DNA of 64,000 nucleotides. It comes from Botryllus schlosseri (taxonomy: Eukaryota). The DNA lies in NCBI GenBank assembly GCA_051294905.1, contig CM119385.1, positions 16,120,001 to 16,184,000 on the forward strand, written 5' to 3'. The notes under the pieces are model-generated. The model made no database searches. It had not been told where the DNA came from and saw only the letters and a list, made by a program, of their open reading frames with translations. The number at the start of each line of letters is the position of its first letter. The first letter of the stretch is position 1. The position numbers and the translations under genes were made by a program. Below, piece by piece: positions 18,101 to 25,600 of the stretch.

Positions 18101-21100
18101 TAGGAAAATTTCATTTGCGTATTCTTCTTGCTAGAATTCTTGTAATATATGACTATAGCATAGATTATACGATGGACTCATAGTATTGGTTCAATGCTAT
18201 AAAAAAAGTAGAAAACTGCAGTTACTGCAGCGGGTTCCAACAAATTTTAATGTGTTTTGAATCAAATCCGAAATGAAGTAATCCTAACCGGCTTGAGCAG
18301 TCCATCGAATTCAATATCAGGTTTTCAGCAAGTAAAACACTGTCAATGACTCACTACATTAAGGACAATCGTCAACCTTTTACGAGCTGTCGACAGCCAG
18401 ATCGTTCTCAAGATTGATCCGGCCATTGATGAATTATTGCCGGCTAGTAGGACTGGATGCAATGCAAAATGTCTCAGCGACGTATTACATGGGCCTATTG
18501 AAGAAAACAGGCACTACAGAGGCATTCACGTAACATCCTTTCAATTCTTCGAATTATCAACGAAAGGGGCATTTAGGCAGGATAGCCGACAAAAATGGCT
18601 AGGGTACCAAATTCAGACATGAAACTTTGTTACGCTAAGCTAGTCTGGTGAACACATGAAAACACTGGACATGGACAAACACTCTTTCAAAGCATGAAAG
18701 AAGGTAAACCATGAATAAATATCTATTCACAAACTGTATACAGAATGACAGTTACCCACACACTGAACTGGGCAAGCTGGCATACAGTTATGATAATTTC
18801 CAATGCACTATCAACGTATCAAGTATGAATCAGTGTAAGTTAAAGACATCACTGAGCACGAGCAATGAGCCTGACTGTTGCGGGTGTTGGTGGTCTTGAT
18901 CATCACTTATGACTTACTTCATGGCGTACAAGTTCCGTTGTTTGTATAAATATTTTTCCGCGAGAACTTCCATTTTCTTTGCATATTCGCCGTCGATTTC
19001 GGCTTTCCGCCGTAAGAAATCCTGCACATCGCTCAGCAGCGCCACACGCGATTCTGTGTGTTGATCGAGGCATTTGATCTGTTCGTTGAGCTGATTTCGG
19101 ATTTCTGAAAATTGATAAAAGGTTACACTGTGCCGACACAAAAACAGCCATCAAATGTACTGCCTGCAATATTAACAAGGTTTGTGAGAAATACAAAATG
19201 TACCCTACCTCTACCTTCATTTTCAATAGGGATAAGCGTGACAAGCTATAGGGCATGGACTGACAAAATTTTAATTGATCTTGAATTCTAATGCCAGCAA
19301 ATTCAAGTCGGCATCAAATAGTCTACTAACGGAGGACCACAGGTGAATTTAAGTAAGAAAATAGAAATTTGGCTGTTCGAACTTCAGATCACTTTCGTGC
19401 TAGACGAAGATTAAATATCGTTAGAGTTAATAAAGTAATACTGTATATTGGAATTCGGAACAATCGGCCTAGCAAAAATATATTTATATGGTACATCTTT
19501 TCTGCCTTTCGAACTCGCACAATATAACTCCAAATTCAACTCCCAATTAACGTCAGTACCTCATTGGAATGTCCGGTGATGACCAGGTAGGCCTAAGCAC
19601 AGGACTGTCAAAGTAGAGTCAATGAGTGTATCAAATTACTGAGTTAAATGTATCAATCCTCTCTGTGGGGTATCATTCATATAATTGGCTGATAAGGAAT
19701 AGCAGATCAAAGAAAAGCCCTCACGTGTTTGTAACTTGAGCTACTACCCAGTAATAATATATTTGGAAACATATGGTGTAATTTTGAGAATATATTTCCC
19801 CATTGCACGGATGAATAATAGTATACTAACCTCATACAAGGTAAGTGAGTCTGCCCTACAAAGCACGCCTACTTCACTAGACTTGGTAGAAATTGTATAT
19901 GTAGCCTACTACCAAAAACCCAGGACAATTAAGTTTCTTAAGTATCGAAATTTTTTAGAAACCTGAAAATTACCCGTTACGGTTGTAGCTAAAGCAAGAG
20001 CAATGCATTATAGCAAATAGCATATCCATCTTTTAATGAATGTGATTATTTGTGAAAATAATGCTTAGCAAAGCTGGTAAACAGTCAGTACAAGGCGTGT
20101 GGCAAGGCGACTTGTGATAATTTTGTCCAGACTAGTGATCCAAGGATTTGATTCAGTTCAAAATTTATAAAGGTATACGATTGAAGGTATGCACTACGGG
20201 ATGAATTTCGCCACGAAATTCCACAGTACTGTGGCTTTTCGAGAGAACCAAGAAACCTCAGATGTGTAACGAGGCATTAAAGCGATGATATCTCCCAGGG
20301 ATGAAGTAACAAGTTCCACATAGTTGCCACCAATTACGTAGAATCAATGTCTCGTGGACTTATCTTCACATCAGCACTTTTACAACATAGGTAGGCCTAG
20401 TGACTGTTGTTGAGTATGTGCAAGGAATGTGCCCTCGAGGCATTAAATTTGAACCTTACAGTAACTGTTGGAGTGGTGATGCATAACTTGAAGAGTGCAA
20501 CACTGCCAACCAGACAACATGTCTGGATATTTATGAAAACTTATCTTAAAGACATTTTGGACTCTAGAATGTTGTATGTCAACGTAACAGCAAGAAGTTT
20601 CACTTGTAAGTATATTGTTACTATTAAATACAAAAGCACACAGAATCACAGCCAAACAGAATATCCTGAAAATTTGGAACTAATAGAAAATGGCAGGCCT
20701 AATAATTTTCAGTGGTGACACAACTTATATCATTTGACATACAGTAGCCTCCGATAGTGTCTTAACTCTTAACGTGTAACTTCAAGAATAATGAAGCAGG
20801 CAAGCAGTGGGTTTGAGAGAATCAAATGCATTGTTAACAAATTCAACGAAATAAGGCCTACATATGGCAATGGCATGGTCTAATCACTTCAAAGCAATCT
20901 GTCTAACTGCAGAGAGAGAGGGTGTCAAGATCACACTTGTGACATAGTAAGTAGGCATCAGTGAAAGACAATGATTTTTACGCAGATGTGCTGAAGCAAT
21001 GAAATTAACAGTAAGAACCTGAGTAGGCTAACAAATTGTCACCTAAATTCCACTGAAAGCTTCATTTTGAACAAAATAATGCCAGATGTACCACAGCATA

Positions 21101-21250
21101 AATCAGATCGAACAGTCCCATGTGAAATAAAACGGAAATAAATTGATTAGATGCACTCCTGCCAGACAAACTAGCAAAGCACTTTATCGATTACATACCT
21201 TTTATCCTAATGTCACACTCGACAAGCGGAGGTCTCTCTTTCCTCGACAT
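22..21250 (-). CDS. SRGAP: SLIT-ROBO Rho GTPase-activating protein (srGAP family; F-BAR + RhoGAP), spliced, 3' end beyond left edge of window
   Basis: 16 GT-AG exons join in frame (2076 nt, 692 codons): 21199-21250, 18918-19104, 17504-17675, 15189-15326, 14300-14398, 14101-14229, 11562-11710, 10901-11078, 10319-10531, 10106-10190, 8803-8842, 7569-7689, 4291-4395, 3307-3475, 1032-1137, 22-154. Motifs recalled from vertebrate srGAP1-3: EIRNQLNEQIKCLDQ, KYSENKLKSIKARNEYL, IPPVVESCIRVINLYGMHHQGIFRVPGS (Arg finger), ENMMDAYNLAVCFGPTL. The specific paralogue cannot be assigned. Confidence 0.95.
1032..1137 (-). CDS. SRGAP: srGAP exon, RhoGAP
   Basis: IQDSEKRVESIRRTLLNIPESVLVVMRYLFAFLNH; cag/gtaagt. 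Confidence 0.96.
2057..2966 (+). mobile_element. Decayed hAT-type DNA transposon (internally deleted)
   Basis: Left end cagggcgattttttt, degenerate right end aaaaaaattgcccca; flanks (c/g)ttataat; repeated gtcaaaa(a)tt subterminal motifs at both ends. Confidence 0.55.
2371..2586 (+). pseudogene. Relic of hAT transposase C-terminal dimerisation region
   Basis: SPAVYAQLQCGQPTAAVERSICILGKL resembles the hAT ...PxTS(A/C)xxERSFSxxxxL motif; lies inside the 2057-2966 element. Confidence 0.45.
3307..3475 (-). CDS. SRGAP: srGAP exon, RhoGAP
   Basis: DITEMKTQFDRGEDP...DINSVAGLLKLYFRQL; cag/gtaagt. Confidence 0.96.
4291..4395 (-). CDS. SRGAP: srGAP exon, RhoGAP with arginine finger
   Basis: DTGCSIPPVVESCIRVINLYGMHHQGIFRVPGSHQ; not in supplied ORF track. 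Confidence 0.96.
7569..7689 (-). CDS. SRGAP: srGAP exon preceding RhoGAP
   Basis: TIKFQQSKKGTIGKRSSRMSMVVRTTVKSHFASNMEQYIK (cf. LFNGSMEAFIK). Confidence 0.85.
8803..8842 (-). CDS. SRGAP: srGAP 40-nt linker mini-exon
   Basis: (G)ATTDLEGANTIS(S); ttatttcag acceptor and gtact donor; its 1/2 phases bridge exons 10106-10190 and 7569-7689. Confidence 0.7.
10106..10190 (-). CDS. SRGAP: srGAP exon
   Basis: KFKEFLEKSSQLKKLQVKKKLLQQALEE (cf. KxxEYLxGxNLITKLQAKHDLL); cag/gtaac. Confidence 0.9.
10319..10531 (-). CDS. SRGAP: srGAP exon
   Basis: LKKTLSATTEGIQKQ...KIEDNEDFYIQ; tag/gtttgg, phase 0/0. Confidence 0.9.
10901..11078 (-). CDS. SRGAP: srGAP exon, F-BAR extension
   Basis: FLENNHNQFSIPPEFVFSPHDGDQVSQV...DDDE (cf. 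vertebrate FCPPxKFEFQPHMGDxVxQ); not in supplied ORF track. Confidence 0.92.
11562..11710 (-). CDS. SRGAP: srGAP exon, F-BAR
   Basis: AKSLGYHESLNRTWKAYDDME...ELDRKADQS; phase 0/2. Confidence 0.92.
14101..14229 (-). CDS. SRGAP: srGAP exon, F-BAR
   Basis: RSQKYSENKLKSIKARNEYLMQLEATNATIDKYYTADIAGILN; cag/gtgagt. Confidence 0.95.
14300..14398 (-). CDS. SRGAP: srGAP exon
   Basis: FEKRADKGGESPNMDPKAKRSSSFKKLDKLREK; cag/gtaagc, phase 0/0. Confidence 0.88.
15189..15326 (-). CDS. SRGAP: srGAP exon, F-BAR
   Basis: THEINLGCQDNLMKDLRKLYQSMQTYQQYFTESTQSENKLKQVEKQ; cag/gtgagt. Confidence 0.92.
16918..17040 (+). mobile_element. Degenerate non-LTR retrotransposon reverse-transcriptase fragment
   Basis: Frame reads ...SMIITRGLRQGRCCS, like the LINE RT motif GLRQGC(C/P)LSP; stops upstream; abuts a SINE head. 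Confidence 0.4.
17041..17190 (+). mobile_element. Old, diverged copy of tRNA-derived SINE
   Basis: A-box gagatagcgtagtgg, B-box-like atgttcaatt, and gaggttattctgggctcctc matching the body of the copies at 27607 and 63251. Confidence 0.5.
17504..17675 (-). CDS. SRGAP: srGAP exon, F-BAR
   Basis: KEQPDLELQSPVKCWFQLLEH...ISEDIVRLHKR; phases 2/0 fit neighbours. Confidence 0.93.
18918..19104 (-). CDS. SRGAP: srGAP exon, F-BAR start
   Basis: IRNQLNEQIKCLDQHTESRVALLSDVQDFLRRKAEIDGEYAKKMEVLAEKY; ttttcag acceptor, gtaagt donor. Confidence 0.95.
21199..21250 (-). CDS. SRGAP: srGAP first coding exon (MSRKERPPLVECDIRIK-E)
   Basis: ATG plus 17 codons and a phase-1 GTATGT donor, joining the phase-1 acceptor at 19104. 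VECDIRIKE|IRNQL parallels vertebrate AEY(D/E)xQ(V/I)KE|IRAQL. Confidence 0.8.
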
Positions 21251-21345
21251 GATTGCGTCTCACCGTGGAATATCCCAATAACGTCGCACCTCAAGACCAG
21301 GATGTACTAAATCTAAGAGCTACACTCATATCTAAGTTTATGCGT

Positions 21346-21363
21346 CTGATGCGAAAAGTAACA
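21346..21363 (-). promoter_or_regulatory. Candidate 3' splice acceptor (cis or SL-trans) upstream of srGAP ATG
   Basis: Minus strand reads tgttacttttcgcatcag, 95 nt before the ATG. An alternative AG lies at 21313-21315 (gctcttag). Using 21346 would include a 12-codon uORF (21329-21291). Confidence 0.4.
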
Positions 21364-21591
21364 GTTGATTCTACCACATAATATCAGAGCACACATATTT
21401 TGCGATACAATGAAACGTGGTACGGGTGAGGACAGAGCACCGAATCATGAAAAGCAATTACCGCAATTATATAAAGCTAGTATTGTAGCTGCGCCAAGTG
21501 CATTACTGAGTATTTTCTAATATAATATTGAAATTTCGCATCACATCAATTTAACAAATAGCTACCCTACTCATGAAGCAACACAGCATCA

Positions 21592-22629
21592 TTAAAATGA
21601 CGCGGCAAATTTTTCGCCTTTTGCGATTGATTTTTCAAGTTCCGGGATGCAGTTGTCGACCAGCTGCTTCTCGTAATCAGACAACTCCCCGAGTCCGAGA
21701 TTCTTTTCGACGCCTTCGGGTCCCAAAAGCAGCTGCGTCGAGAAGTACGGCACGGACGCGACGTCAGATCTCACAAACGCGCATTCGACGACACCTTCCT
21801 TTCCAGCCAAAGCGTCGAGGAGAGAATTGGCAAACCTTGCCCCGGCATACGCCATGGACAGTGTCGCGGACCCGGCGCCGTCCTTGGCCTTCACAACCTC
21901 GGTGCCGGCATCCTGTATTCTCTCGGTCATGGCTTTCAGTTCGTCACCCTCGAATGAGACTTTAGGACTGCAACGCGAGATGACAGGGATAATCGTAATA
22001 CCCGCGTGCCCGCCAATTACTGGAACATTAATAGTAGAGACATTCAACCCCCTTGCCTCTGCGATGAACGCATTGGCACGGACAATGTCCAAAGATGTAA
22101 TCCCGAAAATTCGGTTCGGATTATAAACGCCGGCCTTTTTATAGATTTCCGACGCGATAGGCACGGTAGAGTTAACTGGATTGGAGATAATTCCCAAGAA
22201 AGCGCTAGGGCAGTGCGTAGCGCACGCCTTTGAAAGACCTGCCACAATGCTAGCATTGGTGTTGAACAAGTCATCGCGGGTCATGCCTGGTTTTCTCGGT
22301 ACCCCGGCAGGCATGATAACAATATCGGCTCCTTTCAGACAATCAGCAATCTCGTCTTCACCCATGTGCCCGGTCACTTTGGCTGGGGTGTCGATATGGC
22401 TCAGATCGGCAGCGACCCCCGGGGTGTGCATGATATCATACAAAGCCAGCTCGGTTACGCCTGGGTTTTGCTTCAAAAGCAGCGACAAGGGCTGTCCTAT
22501 TCCACCAGAAGCTCCGAGTACAGCCACTTTTTTGTTGTTAGTTGCTGACAGGGATAGGCATCTCGAAGACTGTGCTAGACTCTTGGCAACAGTTTGTTTG
22601 GATATGCGGCACAAAGCTTTGAAAAACAT
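21592..22629 (-). CDS. MDH2: Malate dehydrogenase, mitochondrial (single-exon CDS, 345 aa)
   Basis: Uninterrupted ORF with [10 protein letters not shown] (NAD-binding), [38 protein letters not shown] (catalytic His) and [10 protein letters not shown]. The N-terminus is basic/hydroxylated and acid-free, typical of a mitochondrial presequence. Confidence 0.98.
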
Positions 22630-22630
22630 G

Positions 22631-22645
22631 CTGACAAATAGTTGT
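22631..22645 (-). promoter_or_regulatory. 3' splice acceptor one base upstream of MDH2 ATG
   Basis: Minus strand reads acaactatttgtcag|C ATG, preceded by a very AT-rich stretch (about 22660-22810). Confidence 0.55.
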
Positions 22646-25600
22646 TATGTCGATAGGAACTAGAAACTAAATCAATTATATCTGTGAAAAAGTAACAATG
22701 TTACGGTTACGCTTCAAAATATATTTATTATTATAAATACCATGTCACAAACTTTAATTGTCTTGTTGAGCATGAATAGACAACTATTAAATTGCTCAAT
22801 TTGTTATTATTGCTTAGTCACTGCTGTGATAACAATCCATTTACGCTCACAGGGCGTGAAATGTGTGTCTAACAAGGGCAGATAAGCTGTGACACCTTAG
22901 ATGGCGCTAGGACAAATACCAGAACTGCTCTGGTCGTCAACAACACACCTGGGTAAGGAAATGATATTATGAACGCCTACTGTATACCATCTGCTGCAAA
23001 CTGATCAGTAACATAAATATATCAGGGTTGAAATAAGAATCAACGACTTCAATAATATTTCGTCTTTGAATTGAATTGGAAATTCTGGACAGTGTTGCTG
23101 GTACAGCTGATACAGCTTTATATCCACAGGGCCTTGCCTATGTTATGTAACATTGTCTAAGTCTATACCTTTTGGATCATTGTGAGATGTACTCCATGTA
23201 TTTTGGACCACATCATGCTTTGAAAACATGCAAAACTGACTGCGACGCAATGATAAATAACAGGAAAGCATGAAAACTAGTATATTATGCGCATTGTACA
23301 CAATGCTCTCAAAGCTAGGAGGTTTGATTTTGAGATAAGTCAAGAAAAAATTTATCAATTCAGACAGGCCGGAAGTCAAGACTGTATAATCTGAATAGTA
23401 GCCTATATAAAGGATGTACTACAACAATAACAACATGAGATAAATAATTCATGAAGGTTGCAATGATGTTATCCAATAAATTCAAGTCCTCAAGGGAAGG
23501 AATACACCAACTTCTGCAAAAGCAATGCATTACCTGCTATCGATATATGCAAAAACAAAATTCCGAAATTGGAGACTAGGAAAGTCGTGCTAGAACAACG
23601 CACAAGTGCCACTTCATTCTATGGGATAAGGTCAGCAGGAAAGAAGTACACACATAAGCAAATCAAGTCGATACCAGACAAAAATCAAGAGGTTTTCGTA
23701 GCGCAATTCAGAATTATAGATGAGATCAAGATTGAATAAAAGCACGTTTGTTATCACAAAATGTATCCAAGTTTTGGTATTATTAAAATTGTGCTTTTTG
23801 TTGACGATACAGCCCCTTGGAACATTAGCATTGCCAAGAAGGCAACATTTCGTCCTCAAATCAATAGATCATCAAATTATTCAAAGTGATGGCAGCATGA
23901 AGAAAGAGTTCATATTTGTCTACACCATTAACCGCAAGGTTATCACGGTGATATAATTCACTGAAACTGCCAGATACATCCCTCATTTATCGGAGGCAAT
24001 GTGTCCCTTACAAAAACACCCTTTAACTCAAAGTGAAGACGGATTGACTATGCCTGCAATACCACAAAGAAACGTATTTCTTTTCACAGCTAGCATAGTT
24101 ATACATATCATTATCTCAAAATTTGTACTAGAGTTCAACTTTTATACACAAGCAGGACATAATAACACATATTGAGAAAATTGTGGTGATCTTGACATCC
24201 GAGACACTACAGATTCAACCAACGCTAAACAATATCAGTTTTAAAAAATGCTATTTCACCATGGAAATGATTGGCTGTTTTGTAGGCCCACTCTTGTCTG
24301 TACCTGGGATTCGGACATTGAAACTCCTGGGACGGAAGTATGCTTATTGCTGCCGATAATCACAAAATATCGTTTTCAATTATCAAGGTACGGGTATCAT
24401 GCAAAGTCATATAGTATAATGGCAAACTTCAACATGCATTATCATACCTTAATCTTATGCTACACAGTGAGGATAAATACACAAGACAAGAAATTATACA
24501 AGTTAACCATTCACAGAGTGAGACACATTGGGTCATTTTATTGTTTGCTCAACTATGACACACAGGTTTTCTATGCCAATTTATATTGAAGATAGCCGTA
24601 TTCTGTGATCCCGTCAAGATAAGCGGTCAAAGGTCAGATATATACCGTACGGCTACAAAAGGATGGTTGCAAGAGTACACAAGAGTACATAACTTCTAAA
24701 AAGAGGAGTAAAAGGAAACGCTAGACCAGATTCACTCAATAATACACATGATTCAGATTGACGAGTCTGAGACGAGTTGAAATAGACCTGGTTCATTATC
24801 TTATATATAACAGAATCAAATTTAATTGAAACACTAATTTTTTAATCATGATTTATGGTACTTGGACATATGGCTACCTATTTGTCTCGCTTCATTAATG
24901 CGTGTCCTGTTTTGTCAGGCGGAATCAAGGTATACATATTCTGCAATTAATTGCGCGTGATGGAAATATTACTCACTTGACAGATACGATCTTGCAGCGT
25001 GACCAACTAAAGCCATGCCATCTTTTATTTCCCAACATCAAATCAATCTCAAGATACTAACAGGGAACTTTCTAGGGCTTCAGTTACCGGTATATAGAAT
25101 GCAAGTCAACCCAACCCAATGTACCGGTACGGTACCAATGGCTACACCAGCAGGCAGCAGAAAGAAATCGAGTTATAAGATGTCAGAGTGGAATCGGTGG
25201 CGACATCACACGCAATGTGCCTTCATTTCAGAGAGAGAGAGAATTATCCATTTGGTTCTACAAAGATGTATACAAAAGAAAGCAAAGTGTATATACTCAT
25301 GCACAACCTGGCTGAAGCCTGTATACCCCTAGAGAATTTCGGTTCCTGCGTGATGAGAGCTTCTCTGAATAGAATAATTAGGTAATTAAACAGAAAGTTC
25401 TAGGAGACGTTGCCACCAATTCCACTCTGGCCTGTATAGGTAGCGAAGGAATCGGTAAACTATAGCCTGAATGCAAAATTCTTGCATCACAGAATGCAGT
25501 AATACTTACATTGGCCTAACATGAACAATGAACATACATCATTGCATCACTCACAGCGAGTAATCCTTCTGTCAACTGCCATGCTGAATTTATAGTTAGA

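What the first reader, a model, noticed from the sequence alone, without database searches (positions are those of the whole stretch)
21199..22810. Candidate bicistronic MDH2-srGAP operon resolved by SL trans-splicing
Seen: MDH2 and srGAP are co-oriented with only 341 nt between the MDH2 stop (21592) and the srGAP ATG (21250), although other spacing in this window runs to kilobases. That gap would have to hold a 3'UTR, a polyA site, a promoter and a 5'UTR. I found no AATAAA or ATTAAA on the coding strand in it. It does contain a pyrimidine-tract acceptor (21346-21348, alternative 21313-21315). MDH2 also has an acceptor 1 nt before its ATG, behind an AT-rich outron-like stretch. Established: tunicates such as Ciona and Oikopleura, and nematodes, have operons resolved by spliced-leader trans-splicing; in Ciona the upstream 3' end often abuts the downstream trans-splice acceptor. 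Inference: a TCA-cycle enzyme and a neuronal/cytoskeletal RhoGAP may share one promoter and one pre-mRNA.
Basis: partly seen in the sequence, partly recalled or inferred. Interest (0 to 1): 0.7.

Follow-up and report, generated by a model that had tools for sequence, protein, structure and literature searches.

The report
Sea-squirt MDH2-srGAP two-gene operon
In this sea-squirt genome the mitochondrial malate dehydrogenase message ends exactly at the splice site where the next gene's (srGAP) message begins, which is the known signature of a tunicate two-gene operon; it is a well-supported but ordinary new example, and the leader tag on srGAP itself was not seen.

Summary
An intronless 345-aa mitochondrial MDH gene (22629-21592, minus strand) lies 341 nt upstream of the co-oriented srGAP start codon (21250). 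The gap has no AATAAA or ATTAAA.

RNA reads add the main evidence.
- MDH2 mRNA carries a 25-nt spliced leader, GATTGGAGTATTTGGTTGTATTAAG, identical to a published chordate SL.
- MDH2 poly(A) tails start on or within 1 nt of the G of AG 21347-21346.
- A spliced srGAP contig ends at 21343.
- Another contig runs from the MDH2 CDS through the gap into spliced srGAP exons.

Poly(A) on the G of the downstream acceptor, no intercistronic DNA and no AAUAAA are the published hallmarks of Ciona operons.

The MDH2-to-srGAP order is kept in Styela clava and in another styelid-like contig. It is absent in Ciona and Clavelina.

SL on srGAP was not seen (depth about 1x) and no TSS data exist. I rate the operon reading at about 0.65. 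It would be a new member of a known kind. The scan noted two other operon candidates elsewhere in this genome.

The parts
22802..22867 (-). Conserved non-coding block upstream of MDH2. It could be a promoter-proximal or outron element; its function is unknown.
   Evidence: It is the only non-coding block conserved between the window and the related contig L014 (79% over 66 nt, E 2e-10). No conserved block lies between the MDH2 stop and the srGAP ATG.
22684..23007 (-). Outron of MDH2 (minimum extent): AT-rich RNA that is removed by trans-splicing.
   Evidence: Bulk RNA depth drops from about 45-57x to about 0 upstream of 22683. Low-level single-cell reads in the same orientation cover 22819-23007 at about 8x and carry locus-specific variants. 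That this cover is outron pre-mRNA is inferred.
22682..22683 (-). AG of the SL trans-splice acceptor of MDH2 (ttactttttcacAG|ATATAATTG).
   Evidence: 46 raw RNA reads of run X23 run on from 22683 into non-genomic letters. In mRNA sense they read template-switch oligo ...ACATGGG, then GATTGGAGTATTTGGTTGTATTA, then AG. The 22-mer is absent from the window and has 614 copies elsewhere in the genome.
22630..22681 (-). MDH2 5'UTR (52 nt) downstream of the SL.
   Evidence: It follows from the SL junction at 22683/22682 and the ATG at 22629.
21592..22629 (-). MDH2 coding sequence: mitochondrial malate dehydrogenase, 345 aa, intronless, single copy in the genome.
   Evidence: ORF. Pfam Ldh_1_N and Ldh_1_C. 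78% identity to Styela clava mitochondrial MDH. It is the only match in the whole genome. RNA depth is 45-90x.
21346..21591 (-). MDH2 3'UTR (246 nt), with no AAUAAA-type hexamer.
   Evidence: RNA depth is continuous from the CDS to 21346 and then falls more than 30-fold. The hexamer scan was negative.
21346..21347 (-). Intercistron boundary: the AG of the predicted srGAP trans-splice acceptor (tgttacttttcgcatcAG|ACGCAT). Its G is also the poly(A) addition site of MDH2.
   Evidence: Poly(A) loose ends (T runs on the + strand) lie just before 21347 (X23, 11 reads) and before 21345 (X21, 38 reads; X1 contig with 18 T). The genome downstream is not A-rich. It is the best pyrimidine tract of the 16 AGs in the gap.
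21199..21345 (-). srGAP exon 1: 5'UTR 21345-21251 (95 nt, holding a short uORF) and CDS 21250-21199 (MSRKERPPLVECDIRIK, phase 1).
   Evidence: X1 contig record 1 covers 21199-21343 and ends there. The joint 21199 to 19104 appears in all four runs. The same peptide is present in L014, and Styela clava has MMSKKDKPPLVECDNRIK.
19105..21198 (-). srGAP intron 1 (2094 nt, GT..AG).
   Evidence: Joint 'skips 2094, CT..AC' on the + strand in X23, X21, X1 and X6. Depth in the raw RNA runs is zero.
18918..19104 (-). srGAP exon 2, the start of the F-BAR/FCH domain.
   Evidence: Pfam FCH at E 2.3e-10. Contigs and joints. Sequence.

Best explanation
MDH2 and srGAP form a Ciona-type dicistronic operon with no intercistronic DNA, in a styelid ascidian.

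Proposed mechanism:
- One primary transcript starts upstream of 22683, and probably upstream of about 23000.
- The 25-nt spliced leader is trans-spliced onto MDH2 at AG 22683-22682 (shown).
- The MDH2 mRNA is ended and polyadenylated on the G of AG 21347-21346 (shown).
- The nucleotide right after that G, 21345, becomes the first nucleotide of the srGAP mRNA once the same SL is trans-spliced there (inferred).
- srGAP exon 1 is then cis-spliced to exon 2 (shown).

That the two genes share one promoter is inferred. It rests on the absence of intercistronic DNA, the lack of a poly(A) signal, a bridging contig, and conserved gene order in Styelidae.
For: 1. The SL is real and is used at this locus. 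46 reads carry template-switch oligo + GATTGGAGTATTTGGTTGTATTA(AG) joined at 22683. The sequence is identical to the 25-nt 'Chordata 1' SL in Table 1 of PMC3795323. It has 614 genomic copies against 0 for the reversed control, and none in the window. Eight of the 12 copies inspected are followed by GT.
2. Poly(A) tails of MDH2 begin at 21346 +/-1 in three runs from three studies. That is on the G of the best acceptor-like AG of 16 in the gap. By chance this is about 1 in 341 for that exact site.
3. There is no AAUAAA, AUUAAA or any of 13 variants anywhere in the 3'UTR.
4. The spliced srGAP contig X1 record 1 ends at 21343, 2 nt inside the boundary, with no upstream exon attached.
5. X6 contig record 8 (1870 nt) runs from the MDH2 CDS (21717) through the boundary and exon 1, and is spliced to exon 2 and further srGAP exons.
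6. Satou et al. 2006 (PMC1488885) describe the same arrangement in Ciona operons. Poly(A) is added to the G of the AG before the downstream trans-splice site, there is no intercistronic DNA, and 16 of 18 operons lack AAUAAA. SLOPPR finds a median intercistronic distance of 1 bp in Ciona (PMC7986045).
7. The proven MDH2 acceptor and the proposed srGAP acceptor look alike: tGTTACTTTTTCACAG|A versus tGTTACTTTTCGCATCAG|A.
8. The same-strand MDH2-to-srGAP order is kept in Styela clava (gap 786 nt) and in contig L014 (gap 887 nt), which has 75% nucleotide identity in the CDS. The only conserved non-coding block lies upstream of MDH2, not between the genes.
Against: - No read or contig with the SL joined to 21345 was listed. 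srGAP exon 1 depth is about 1x in the raw bulk run, and 250 loose ends were not shown.
- The X1 srGAP contig ends at 21343 without SL letters. A capped TSS at that spot would give the same picture.
- The bridging X6 contig comes from a run with patchy low cover of the intron and of the region upstream of MDH2. Pre-mRNA or DNA k-mers could therefore have joined two separate mRNAs, and the tool itself warns that a contig across two genes shows no single transcript.
- Steady-state levels differ about 10-fold (X1) to 60-fold (X23).
- More than 99% of 3'-end reads stop at 21346, so read-through is rare at steady state.
- The gaps in the two relatives are longer (786 and 887 nt), and I had no RNA data for them.
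Confidence: 0.65

Rival explanations
1. Two independent, tightly abutting transcription units. MDH2 ends at 21346, and srGAP starts from its own capped TSS at about 21345-21347 without an SL. The match with an AG would be a coincidence.
For: The X1 srGAP contig ends at 21343 with no SL letters. Expression differs 10- to 60-fold between the genes. TCAGAC around 21348-21343 is loosely initiator-like (my own reading). In Botryllus the fuhc sec/tm pair, 227 bp apart, showed linked transcripts but no SL (PMC3691228).
Against: The poly(A) site falls on the G of the best acceptor of 16 AGs and no poly(A) signal is present, which is what operons show in Ciona. No non-coding block is conserved between the genes. 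The acceptor closely resembles the proven MDH2 SL acceptor.
Confidence: 0.17
2. srGAP is SL trans-spliced at 21346, but from its own promoter lying inside the MDH2 gene or its 3'UTR. The two units would overlap and would not share the MDH2 promoter.
For: [quoted passage not shown] The very different expression levels are easier to explain with separate promoters. A TATATAA-like motif lies at about 21475-21469.
Against: No excess or separate 5' ends were reported in the 3'UTR apart from template-switch artefacts in the single-cell run. The 3'UTR has no conserved block. It does not explain why MDH2's 3' end forms exactly at the AG without a poly(A) signal.
Confidence: 0.13
3. MDH2 is nested in the first intron of srGAP. 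srGAP would start at an exon upstream of MDH2 that is cis-spliced to the acceptor at 21346.
For: 21346 is a good acceptor, and intronless genes are often nested.
Against: No joint into 21345 from anywhere in 21346-24500 appears in any of the four runs. The X1 contig stops at 21343 without added letters. Styela clava's called srGAP gene starts downstream of MDH2.
Confidence: 0.03

Closest known systems
Ciona intestinalis SL-resolved operons without intercistronic DNA (Satou et al. 2006, PMC1488885; Satou et al. 2008, PMC2760879)
   Same: Two co-oriented genes. Poly(A) of the upstream mRNA is added on the G of the AG that precedes the downstream 5' end. There is no AAUAAA near that site. A single SL type is used, and the upstream gene is trans-spliced with it as well.
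   Different: A different ascidian order (Stolidobranchia, styelid) and a different SL (25 nt against Ciona's 16-nt ATTCTATTTGAATAAG). The gene pair is not linked in Ciona, where MDH2 has introns and another downstream neighbour. SL on the downstream gene is not yet shown here.
Caenorhabditis elegans SL1-type operons (as discussed in PMC1488885)
   Same: There is no intercistronic sequence. [quoted passage not shown]
   Different: The three fully characterised C. elegans cases keep AAUAAA. They belong to a different phylum and the arrangement probably arose independently.
Botryllus schlosseri fuhc-sec / fuhc-tm pair (PMC3691228)
   Same: A styelid ascidian, two co-oriented genes with a short featureless gap (227 bp), and rare transcripts linking both genes.
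   Different: No SL was found there on either message, and the authors favoured read-through. Here the upstream gene clearly carries the SL, and its poly(A) site sits on an acceptor AG.
C. elegans SL2-type and Oikopleura operons
   Same: Polycistronic transcription resolved by SL trans-splicing.
   Different: Those have intercistronic spacers (about 100 nt and about 23-60 nt), and in nematodes a dedicated SL2. Here the spacer is 0 nt.

Membership tests
SL-resolved operon, Ciona type (no intercistronic DNA) | The organism performs SL trans-splicing | tested here: met
   46 reads carry template-switch oligo + 25-nt SL joined to the MDH2 5'UTR at an AG. The SL is identical to a published chordate SL. 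It has 614 genomic copies and none in the window.
SL-resolved operon, Ciona type (no intercistronic DNA) | Neighbouring genes lie on the same strand | tested here: met
   Both genes are on the minus strand, with 341 nt from stop to ATG.
SL-resolved operon, Ciona type (no intercistronic DNA) | Upstream mRNA poly(A) is added at the G of the AG immediately before the downstream trans-splice site (0-nt spacer) | tested here: met
   Poly(A) loose ends lie at 21345-21347 in X23, X21 and X1. The AG is at 21347-21346. The srGAP contig 5' end is at 21343.
SL-resolved operon, Ciona type (no intercistronic DNA) | The downstream mRNA carries the SL at that acceptor | tested here: inconclusive
   No SL-srGAP read or contig was listed. 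Depth is about 1x and 250 loose ends were not shown.
SL-resolved operon, Ciona type (no intercistronic DNA) | Unresolved dicistronic transcript exists | tested here: inconclusive
   The X6 contig (1870 nt) links the MDH2 CDS, the gap and spliced srGAP exons. The same run has low intron and upstream cover, and contigs can merge separate molecules.
SL-resolved operon, Ciona type (no intercistronic DNA) | No canonical AAUAAA near the upstream poly(A) site (usual in Ciona, not strictly defining) | tested here: met
   None of 15 hexamers is found in the 246-nt 3'UTR. Compare 16 of 18 Ciona operons.
SL-resolved operon, Ciona type (no intercistronic DNA) | No transcription start between the cistrons; a single shared promoter | not testable with these tools
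   No CAGE or TSS-seq was available. Indirect only: the sole conserved non-coding block lies upstream of MDH2.
SL2-type operon (Caenorhabditis) | Intercistronic region of about 100 nt and a specialised SL2 on downstream genes | tested here: not met
   The spacer is 0 nt and only one SL was seen.
srGAP (SLIT-ROBO Rho GTPase-activating protein) | N-terminal F-BAR/FCH, then RhoGAP, then SH3 | tested here: met
   Exon 2 hits FCH at E 2.3e-10. The Styela clava orthologue at the same position (1115 aa) carries FCH, RhoGAP and SH3. The RhoGAP and SH3 exons of the window copy were not examined.
Mitochondrial malate dehydrogenase (MDH2) | Ldh_1_N and Ldh_1_C domains, with closest relatives annotated as mitochondrial MDH | tested here: met
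   Pfam at E about 5e-45 for both domains. 67-78% identity to animal mitochondrial MDH.

The most novel reading that the evidence does not exclude
The 3' end of MDH2 mRNA may be made not by the usual cleavage and polyadenylation machinery but by the trans-splicing reaction at the srGAP acceptor. Poly(A) would then be added to the 3'-OH of the AG that is left after the SL is joined to srGAP. Every MDH2 message would be born together with one srGAP message, and this metabolic/cytoskeletal pairing would have been kept across Styelidae. Satou et al. raised this mechanism for Ciona, and it has never been settled.
Probability: 0.15. Interest if true: 0.6.

Novelty: new member of a known kind. Interest (0 to 1): 0.3.

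Why it matters
Operons resolved by SL trans-splicing are well known in Ciona and Oikopleura. In stolidobranch ascidians I found only the inconclusive Botryllus fuhc case in the searchable literature.

This locus shows, at nucleotide resolution, that the odd Ciona architecture also occurs in a styelid that uses a different SL. That architecture is poly(A) on the G of the downstream acceptor, no spacer and no AAUAAA. The finding suggests the architecture is old within ascidians.

The locus also offers a compact test case. A highly expressed housekeeping gene is followed by a long, weakly expressed gene. This could be used to ask how 3'-end formation and trans-splicing compete at one site.

It does not change any general picture.

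Tried and rejected
- **Ciona SL.** The 16-nt Ciona SL ATTCTATTTGAATAAG occurs once in the genome, at C3:17982209, and is not followed by GT. It is not this species' SL.
- **Rfam.** A scan of the whole window at gathering thresholds gave no hits.
- **Exact-protein look-up of the window's MDH2.** Nothing is on record. The homology search returned no protein above 89% identity. This species' transcript contigs therefore appear not to be reachable through the protein tools, so I ran no further search on srGAP N-terminal fragments to hunt for SL-bearing contigs.
- **Bacterial promoter/terminator scan.** It is irrelevant for a eukaryote and I ignored it.
- **Gasparini & Shimeld 2011** (botryllid SL paper) is not held in the library.
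- **Folding one genomic SL copy with its flank.** No significant structure (z -0.09).
- **Aligning the MDH2 3'UTR with L014.** No convincing conservation.
Rejected as the main site. The listed SL reads (46) join at 22683.
No evidence either way.
- **Nested-gene model.** Rejected, because no joint enters 21345 from upstream.


Full report
**Organism.**
- The genome is a 495.5-Mb ascidian assembly. The window is C15:16120001-16184000.
- The MDH protein is 78% identical to Styela clava mitochondrial MDH and about 70% identical to the Ciona, Phallusia and Clavelina proteins. The animal is therefore a stolidobranch, styelid-like sea squirt.
- Earlier notes of this scan also call it a sea squirt with a spliced leader.

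**Observation.** Everything lies on the minus strand.
- The only large ORF in the window is 22629..21592. It encodes 345 aa without introns and carries Ldh_1_N and Ldh_1_C.
- It is the only MDH2-like sequence in the genome.
- 341 nt after its stop there is an ATG at 21250. It opens a 52-nt coding stretch, MSRKERPPLVECDIRIK, that ends at 21199 before GTATGT.
- Reads in all four runs laid splice 21199 to 19104.
- Exon 2 (19104-18918) continues EIRNQLNEQIKCLDQ... and hits the FCH/F-BAR domain.
- The Styela clava gene at the same position has FCH, RhoGAP and SH3 domains, so the downstream gene is srGAP.
- The gap contains none of AATAAA, ATTAAA or 13 further variants.
- Of its 16 AG dinucleotides, the one at 21347-21346 has the richest pyrimidine tract.

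**RNA evidence (two raw-read runs and two sets of contigs, from four studies).**

*MDH2 5' end.*
- 46 reads of the bulk run X23 leave the genome at 22683.
- In mRNA sense the loose part reads ...ACATGGG GATTGGAGTATTTGGTTGTATTA, followed by the genomic AG at 22683-22682 (reverse complement checked).
- ACATGGG is the end of a template-switch oligo, so the mRNA 5' end is GATTGGAGTATTTGGTTGTATTAAG.
- This 25-mer is letter for letter the 'Chordata 1' spliced leader of Table 1 in PMC3795323.
- Its 22-mer core occurs 614 times across the genome, against 0 for the reversed control. It does not occur in the window even with 3 mismatches.
- Eight of the 12 copies inspected are followed by GT.
- MDH2 is therefore SL trans-spliced, at ttactttttcacAG|ATATAATTG, 52 nt before the ATG.

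*MDH2 3' end.*
- Poly(A) tails begin just after 21347 (X23, 11 reads) or 21345/21346 (X21, 38 reads; an X1 contig with 18 T).
- Base 21345 is an A, so these positions amount to addition on or within 1 nt of the G at 21346.
- The next genomic bases, ACGCATAAAC, are not A-rich, so this is not internal priming.
- Single-cell 3' depth falls from about 400x to 1.5x across this point.

*srGAP 5' end.*
- X1 contig record 1 (578 nt) contains an unlaid 246-nt stretch that matches exon 3, then exon 2 and exon 1. It stops at 21343, 2 nt inside the boundary, with no extra letters.
- X6 contig record 8 (1870 nt) runs without a break from 21717 in the MDH2 CDS through the 3'UTR, the boundary and exon 1. It is then spliced to exon 2 and on into further unlaid sequence beyond it.

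**Interpretation.**
- Satou et al. 2006 (PMC1488885) showed three things for Ciona operons. [quoted passage not shown] The G of the AG before the trans-splice site is the residue to which the upstream poly(A) is added, with some 2-nt microheterogeneity. And 16 of 18 operons lack AAUAAA within 40 nt.
- SLOPPR later found a median intercistronic distance of 1 bp in Ciona (PMC7986045).
- This locus reproduces all three features.
- The chance that a poly(A) site falls on the single best acceptor in a 341-nt gap is about 0.3%. The chance that it falls on any AG is about 5%.
- The proposed acceptor also resembles the proven MDH2 SL acceptor: tGTTACTTTTTCACAG|A against tGTTACTTTTCGCATCAG|A.
- I conclude that the most likely arrangement is a dicistronic operon with a 246-nt MDH2 3'UTR, a 0-nt spacer and a 95-nt srGAP 5'UTR.

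**What is missing.**
- No SL-srGAP chimeric read was listed.
- The X1 contig end at 21343 is equally compatible with a capped start there.
- The X6 bridge comes from a run that also shows patchy 1-8x cover of intron 1 and of the region upstream of MDH2. DNA or pre-mRNA k-mers could have joined two mRNAs in assembly.
- The two genes differ 10- to 60-fold in steady-state level. An operon would therefore need inefficient read-through or unequal stability.
- I put the operon at 0.65, abutting independent units at 0.17, an SL trans-spliced srGAP with its own internal promoter at 0.13, and a nested gene at 0.03.

**Comparative evidence.**
- In Styela clava, an intronless MDH2 is followed on the same strand by srGAP, 786 nt from stop to start.
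- In Logan contig L014, MDH2 is 89% identical in protein and 75% in DNA. The identical exon-1 peptide lies 887 nt after the stop.
- In Ciona intestinalis, MDH2 has introns and is followed by an unrelated gene.
- In Clavelina lepadiformis, MDH2 is intronless and its downstream neighbour is a RabGAP on the other strand.
- The linkage is thus seen in the three styelid-like genomes and in neither of the other two ascidians.
- Between the window and L014, the only conserved non-coding block is 22867-22802, upstream of MDH2. Nothing is conserved between the two genes apart from srGAP exon 1. This is weak support for a single control region.
- Single-cell reads in the MDH2 orientation at 22819-23007 suggest that the primary transcript starts still further upstream.

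**Novelty.**
- SL trans-splicing in botryllids and operons in Ciona and Oikopleura are established.
- In the library I could search, the only stolidobranch operon discussion is the inconclusive fuhc pair (PMC3691228; searches).
- This is a new, well-documented member of a known kind. It shows that the spacer-less architecture is not confined to Ciona.
- First readers of this scan flagged two other operon candidates elsewhere in the genome, TOM7/SKA2/XRN1 and HGH1-NAA20. I did not test them.

Noticed in passing
whole genome; examples L002-L013 around position 1501: The 22-nt core of the spliced leader occurs 614 times, dispersed over many contigs. Eight of the 12 copies inspected are followed by GT, a U-rich Sm-like site (for example AGAATTTTGG) and a GGACC...GGTC hairpin. 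Subsets share longer flanks on both sides.
   Followed up: partly
window 22802-22867 (minus strand): A 66-nt non-coding block upstream of MDH2 is 79% conserved with the related contig L014. It contains GTGACTAAGCA, which fits the RTGACnnnGC antioxidant/Maf-type response element consensus (from memory). It may be a promoter or an outron control element.
   Followed up: partly
window 23097-23133: A 30-nt piece attracts many reads and contigs with 'goes back 28-35' joints and unrelated loose ends on both sides. It appears as a tandem repeat in abundant transcripts from elsewhere in the genome and is not part of the MDH2 transcript.
   Followed up: no
window 21592-22629; L015, L016, L017: MDH2 is intronless here, in Styela clava and in Clavelina. 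In Ciona intestinalis it spans 2869 nt with introns. It is single copy here, so the intronless gene is the working one. This could reflect old retro-replacement or intron loss.
   Followed up: partly
window about 21329-21291 (minus strand): The srGAP 5'UTR holds a short upstream ORF (ATGAGTGTAGCT...TGA, 12 codons). Use of the alternative AG at 21314-21313 would remove its ATG.
   Followed up: no
window 22644-22683: In run X1 the MDH2 5' contig diverges from the reference upstream of 22644, with 29 unlike letters that contain their own TTTACAG. This is probably a divergent haplotype of the 5'UTR and acceptor region. The locus is highly polymorphic, with many fixed differences between the runs and the assembly.
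   Followed up: no
G000:C3:17982209-17982224 (L001): There is a single exact copy of the Ciona 16-nt spliced leader, followed by ACATG and not by GT.
   Followed up: no
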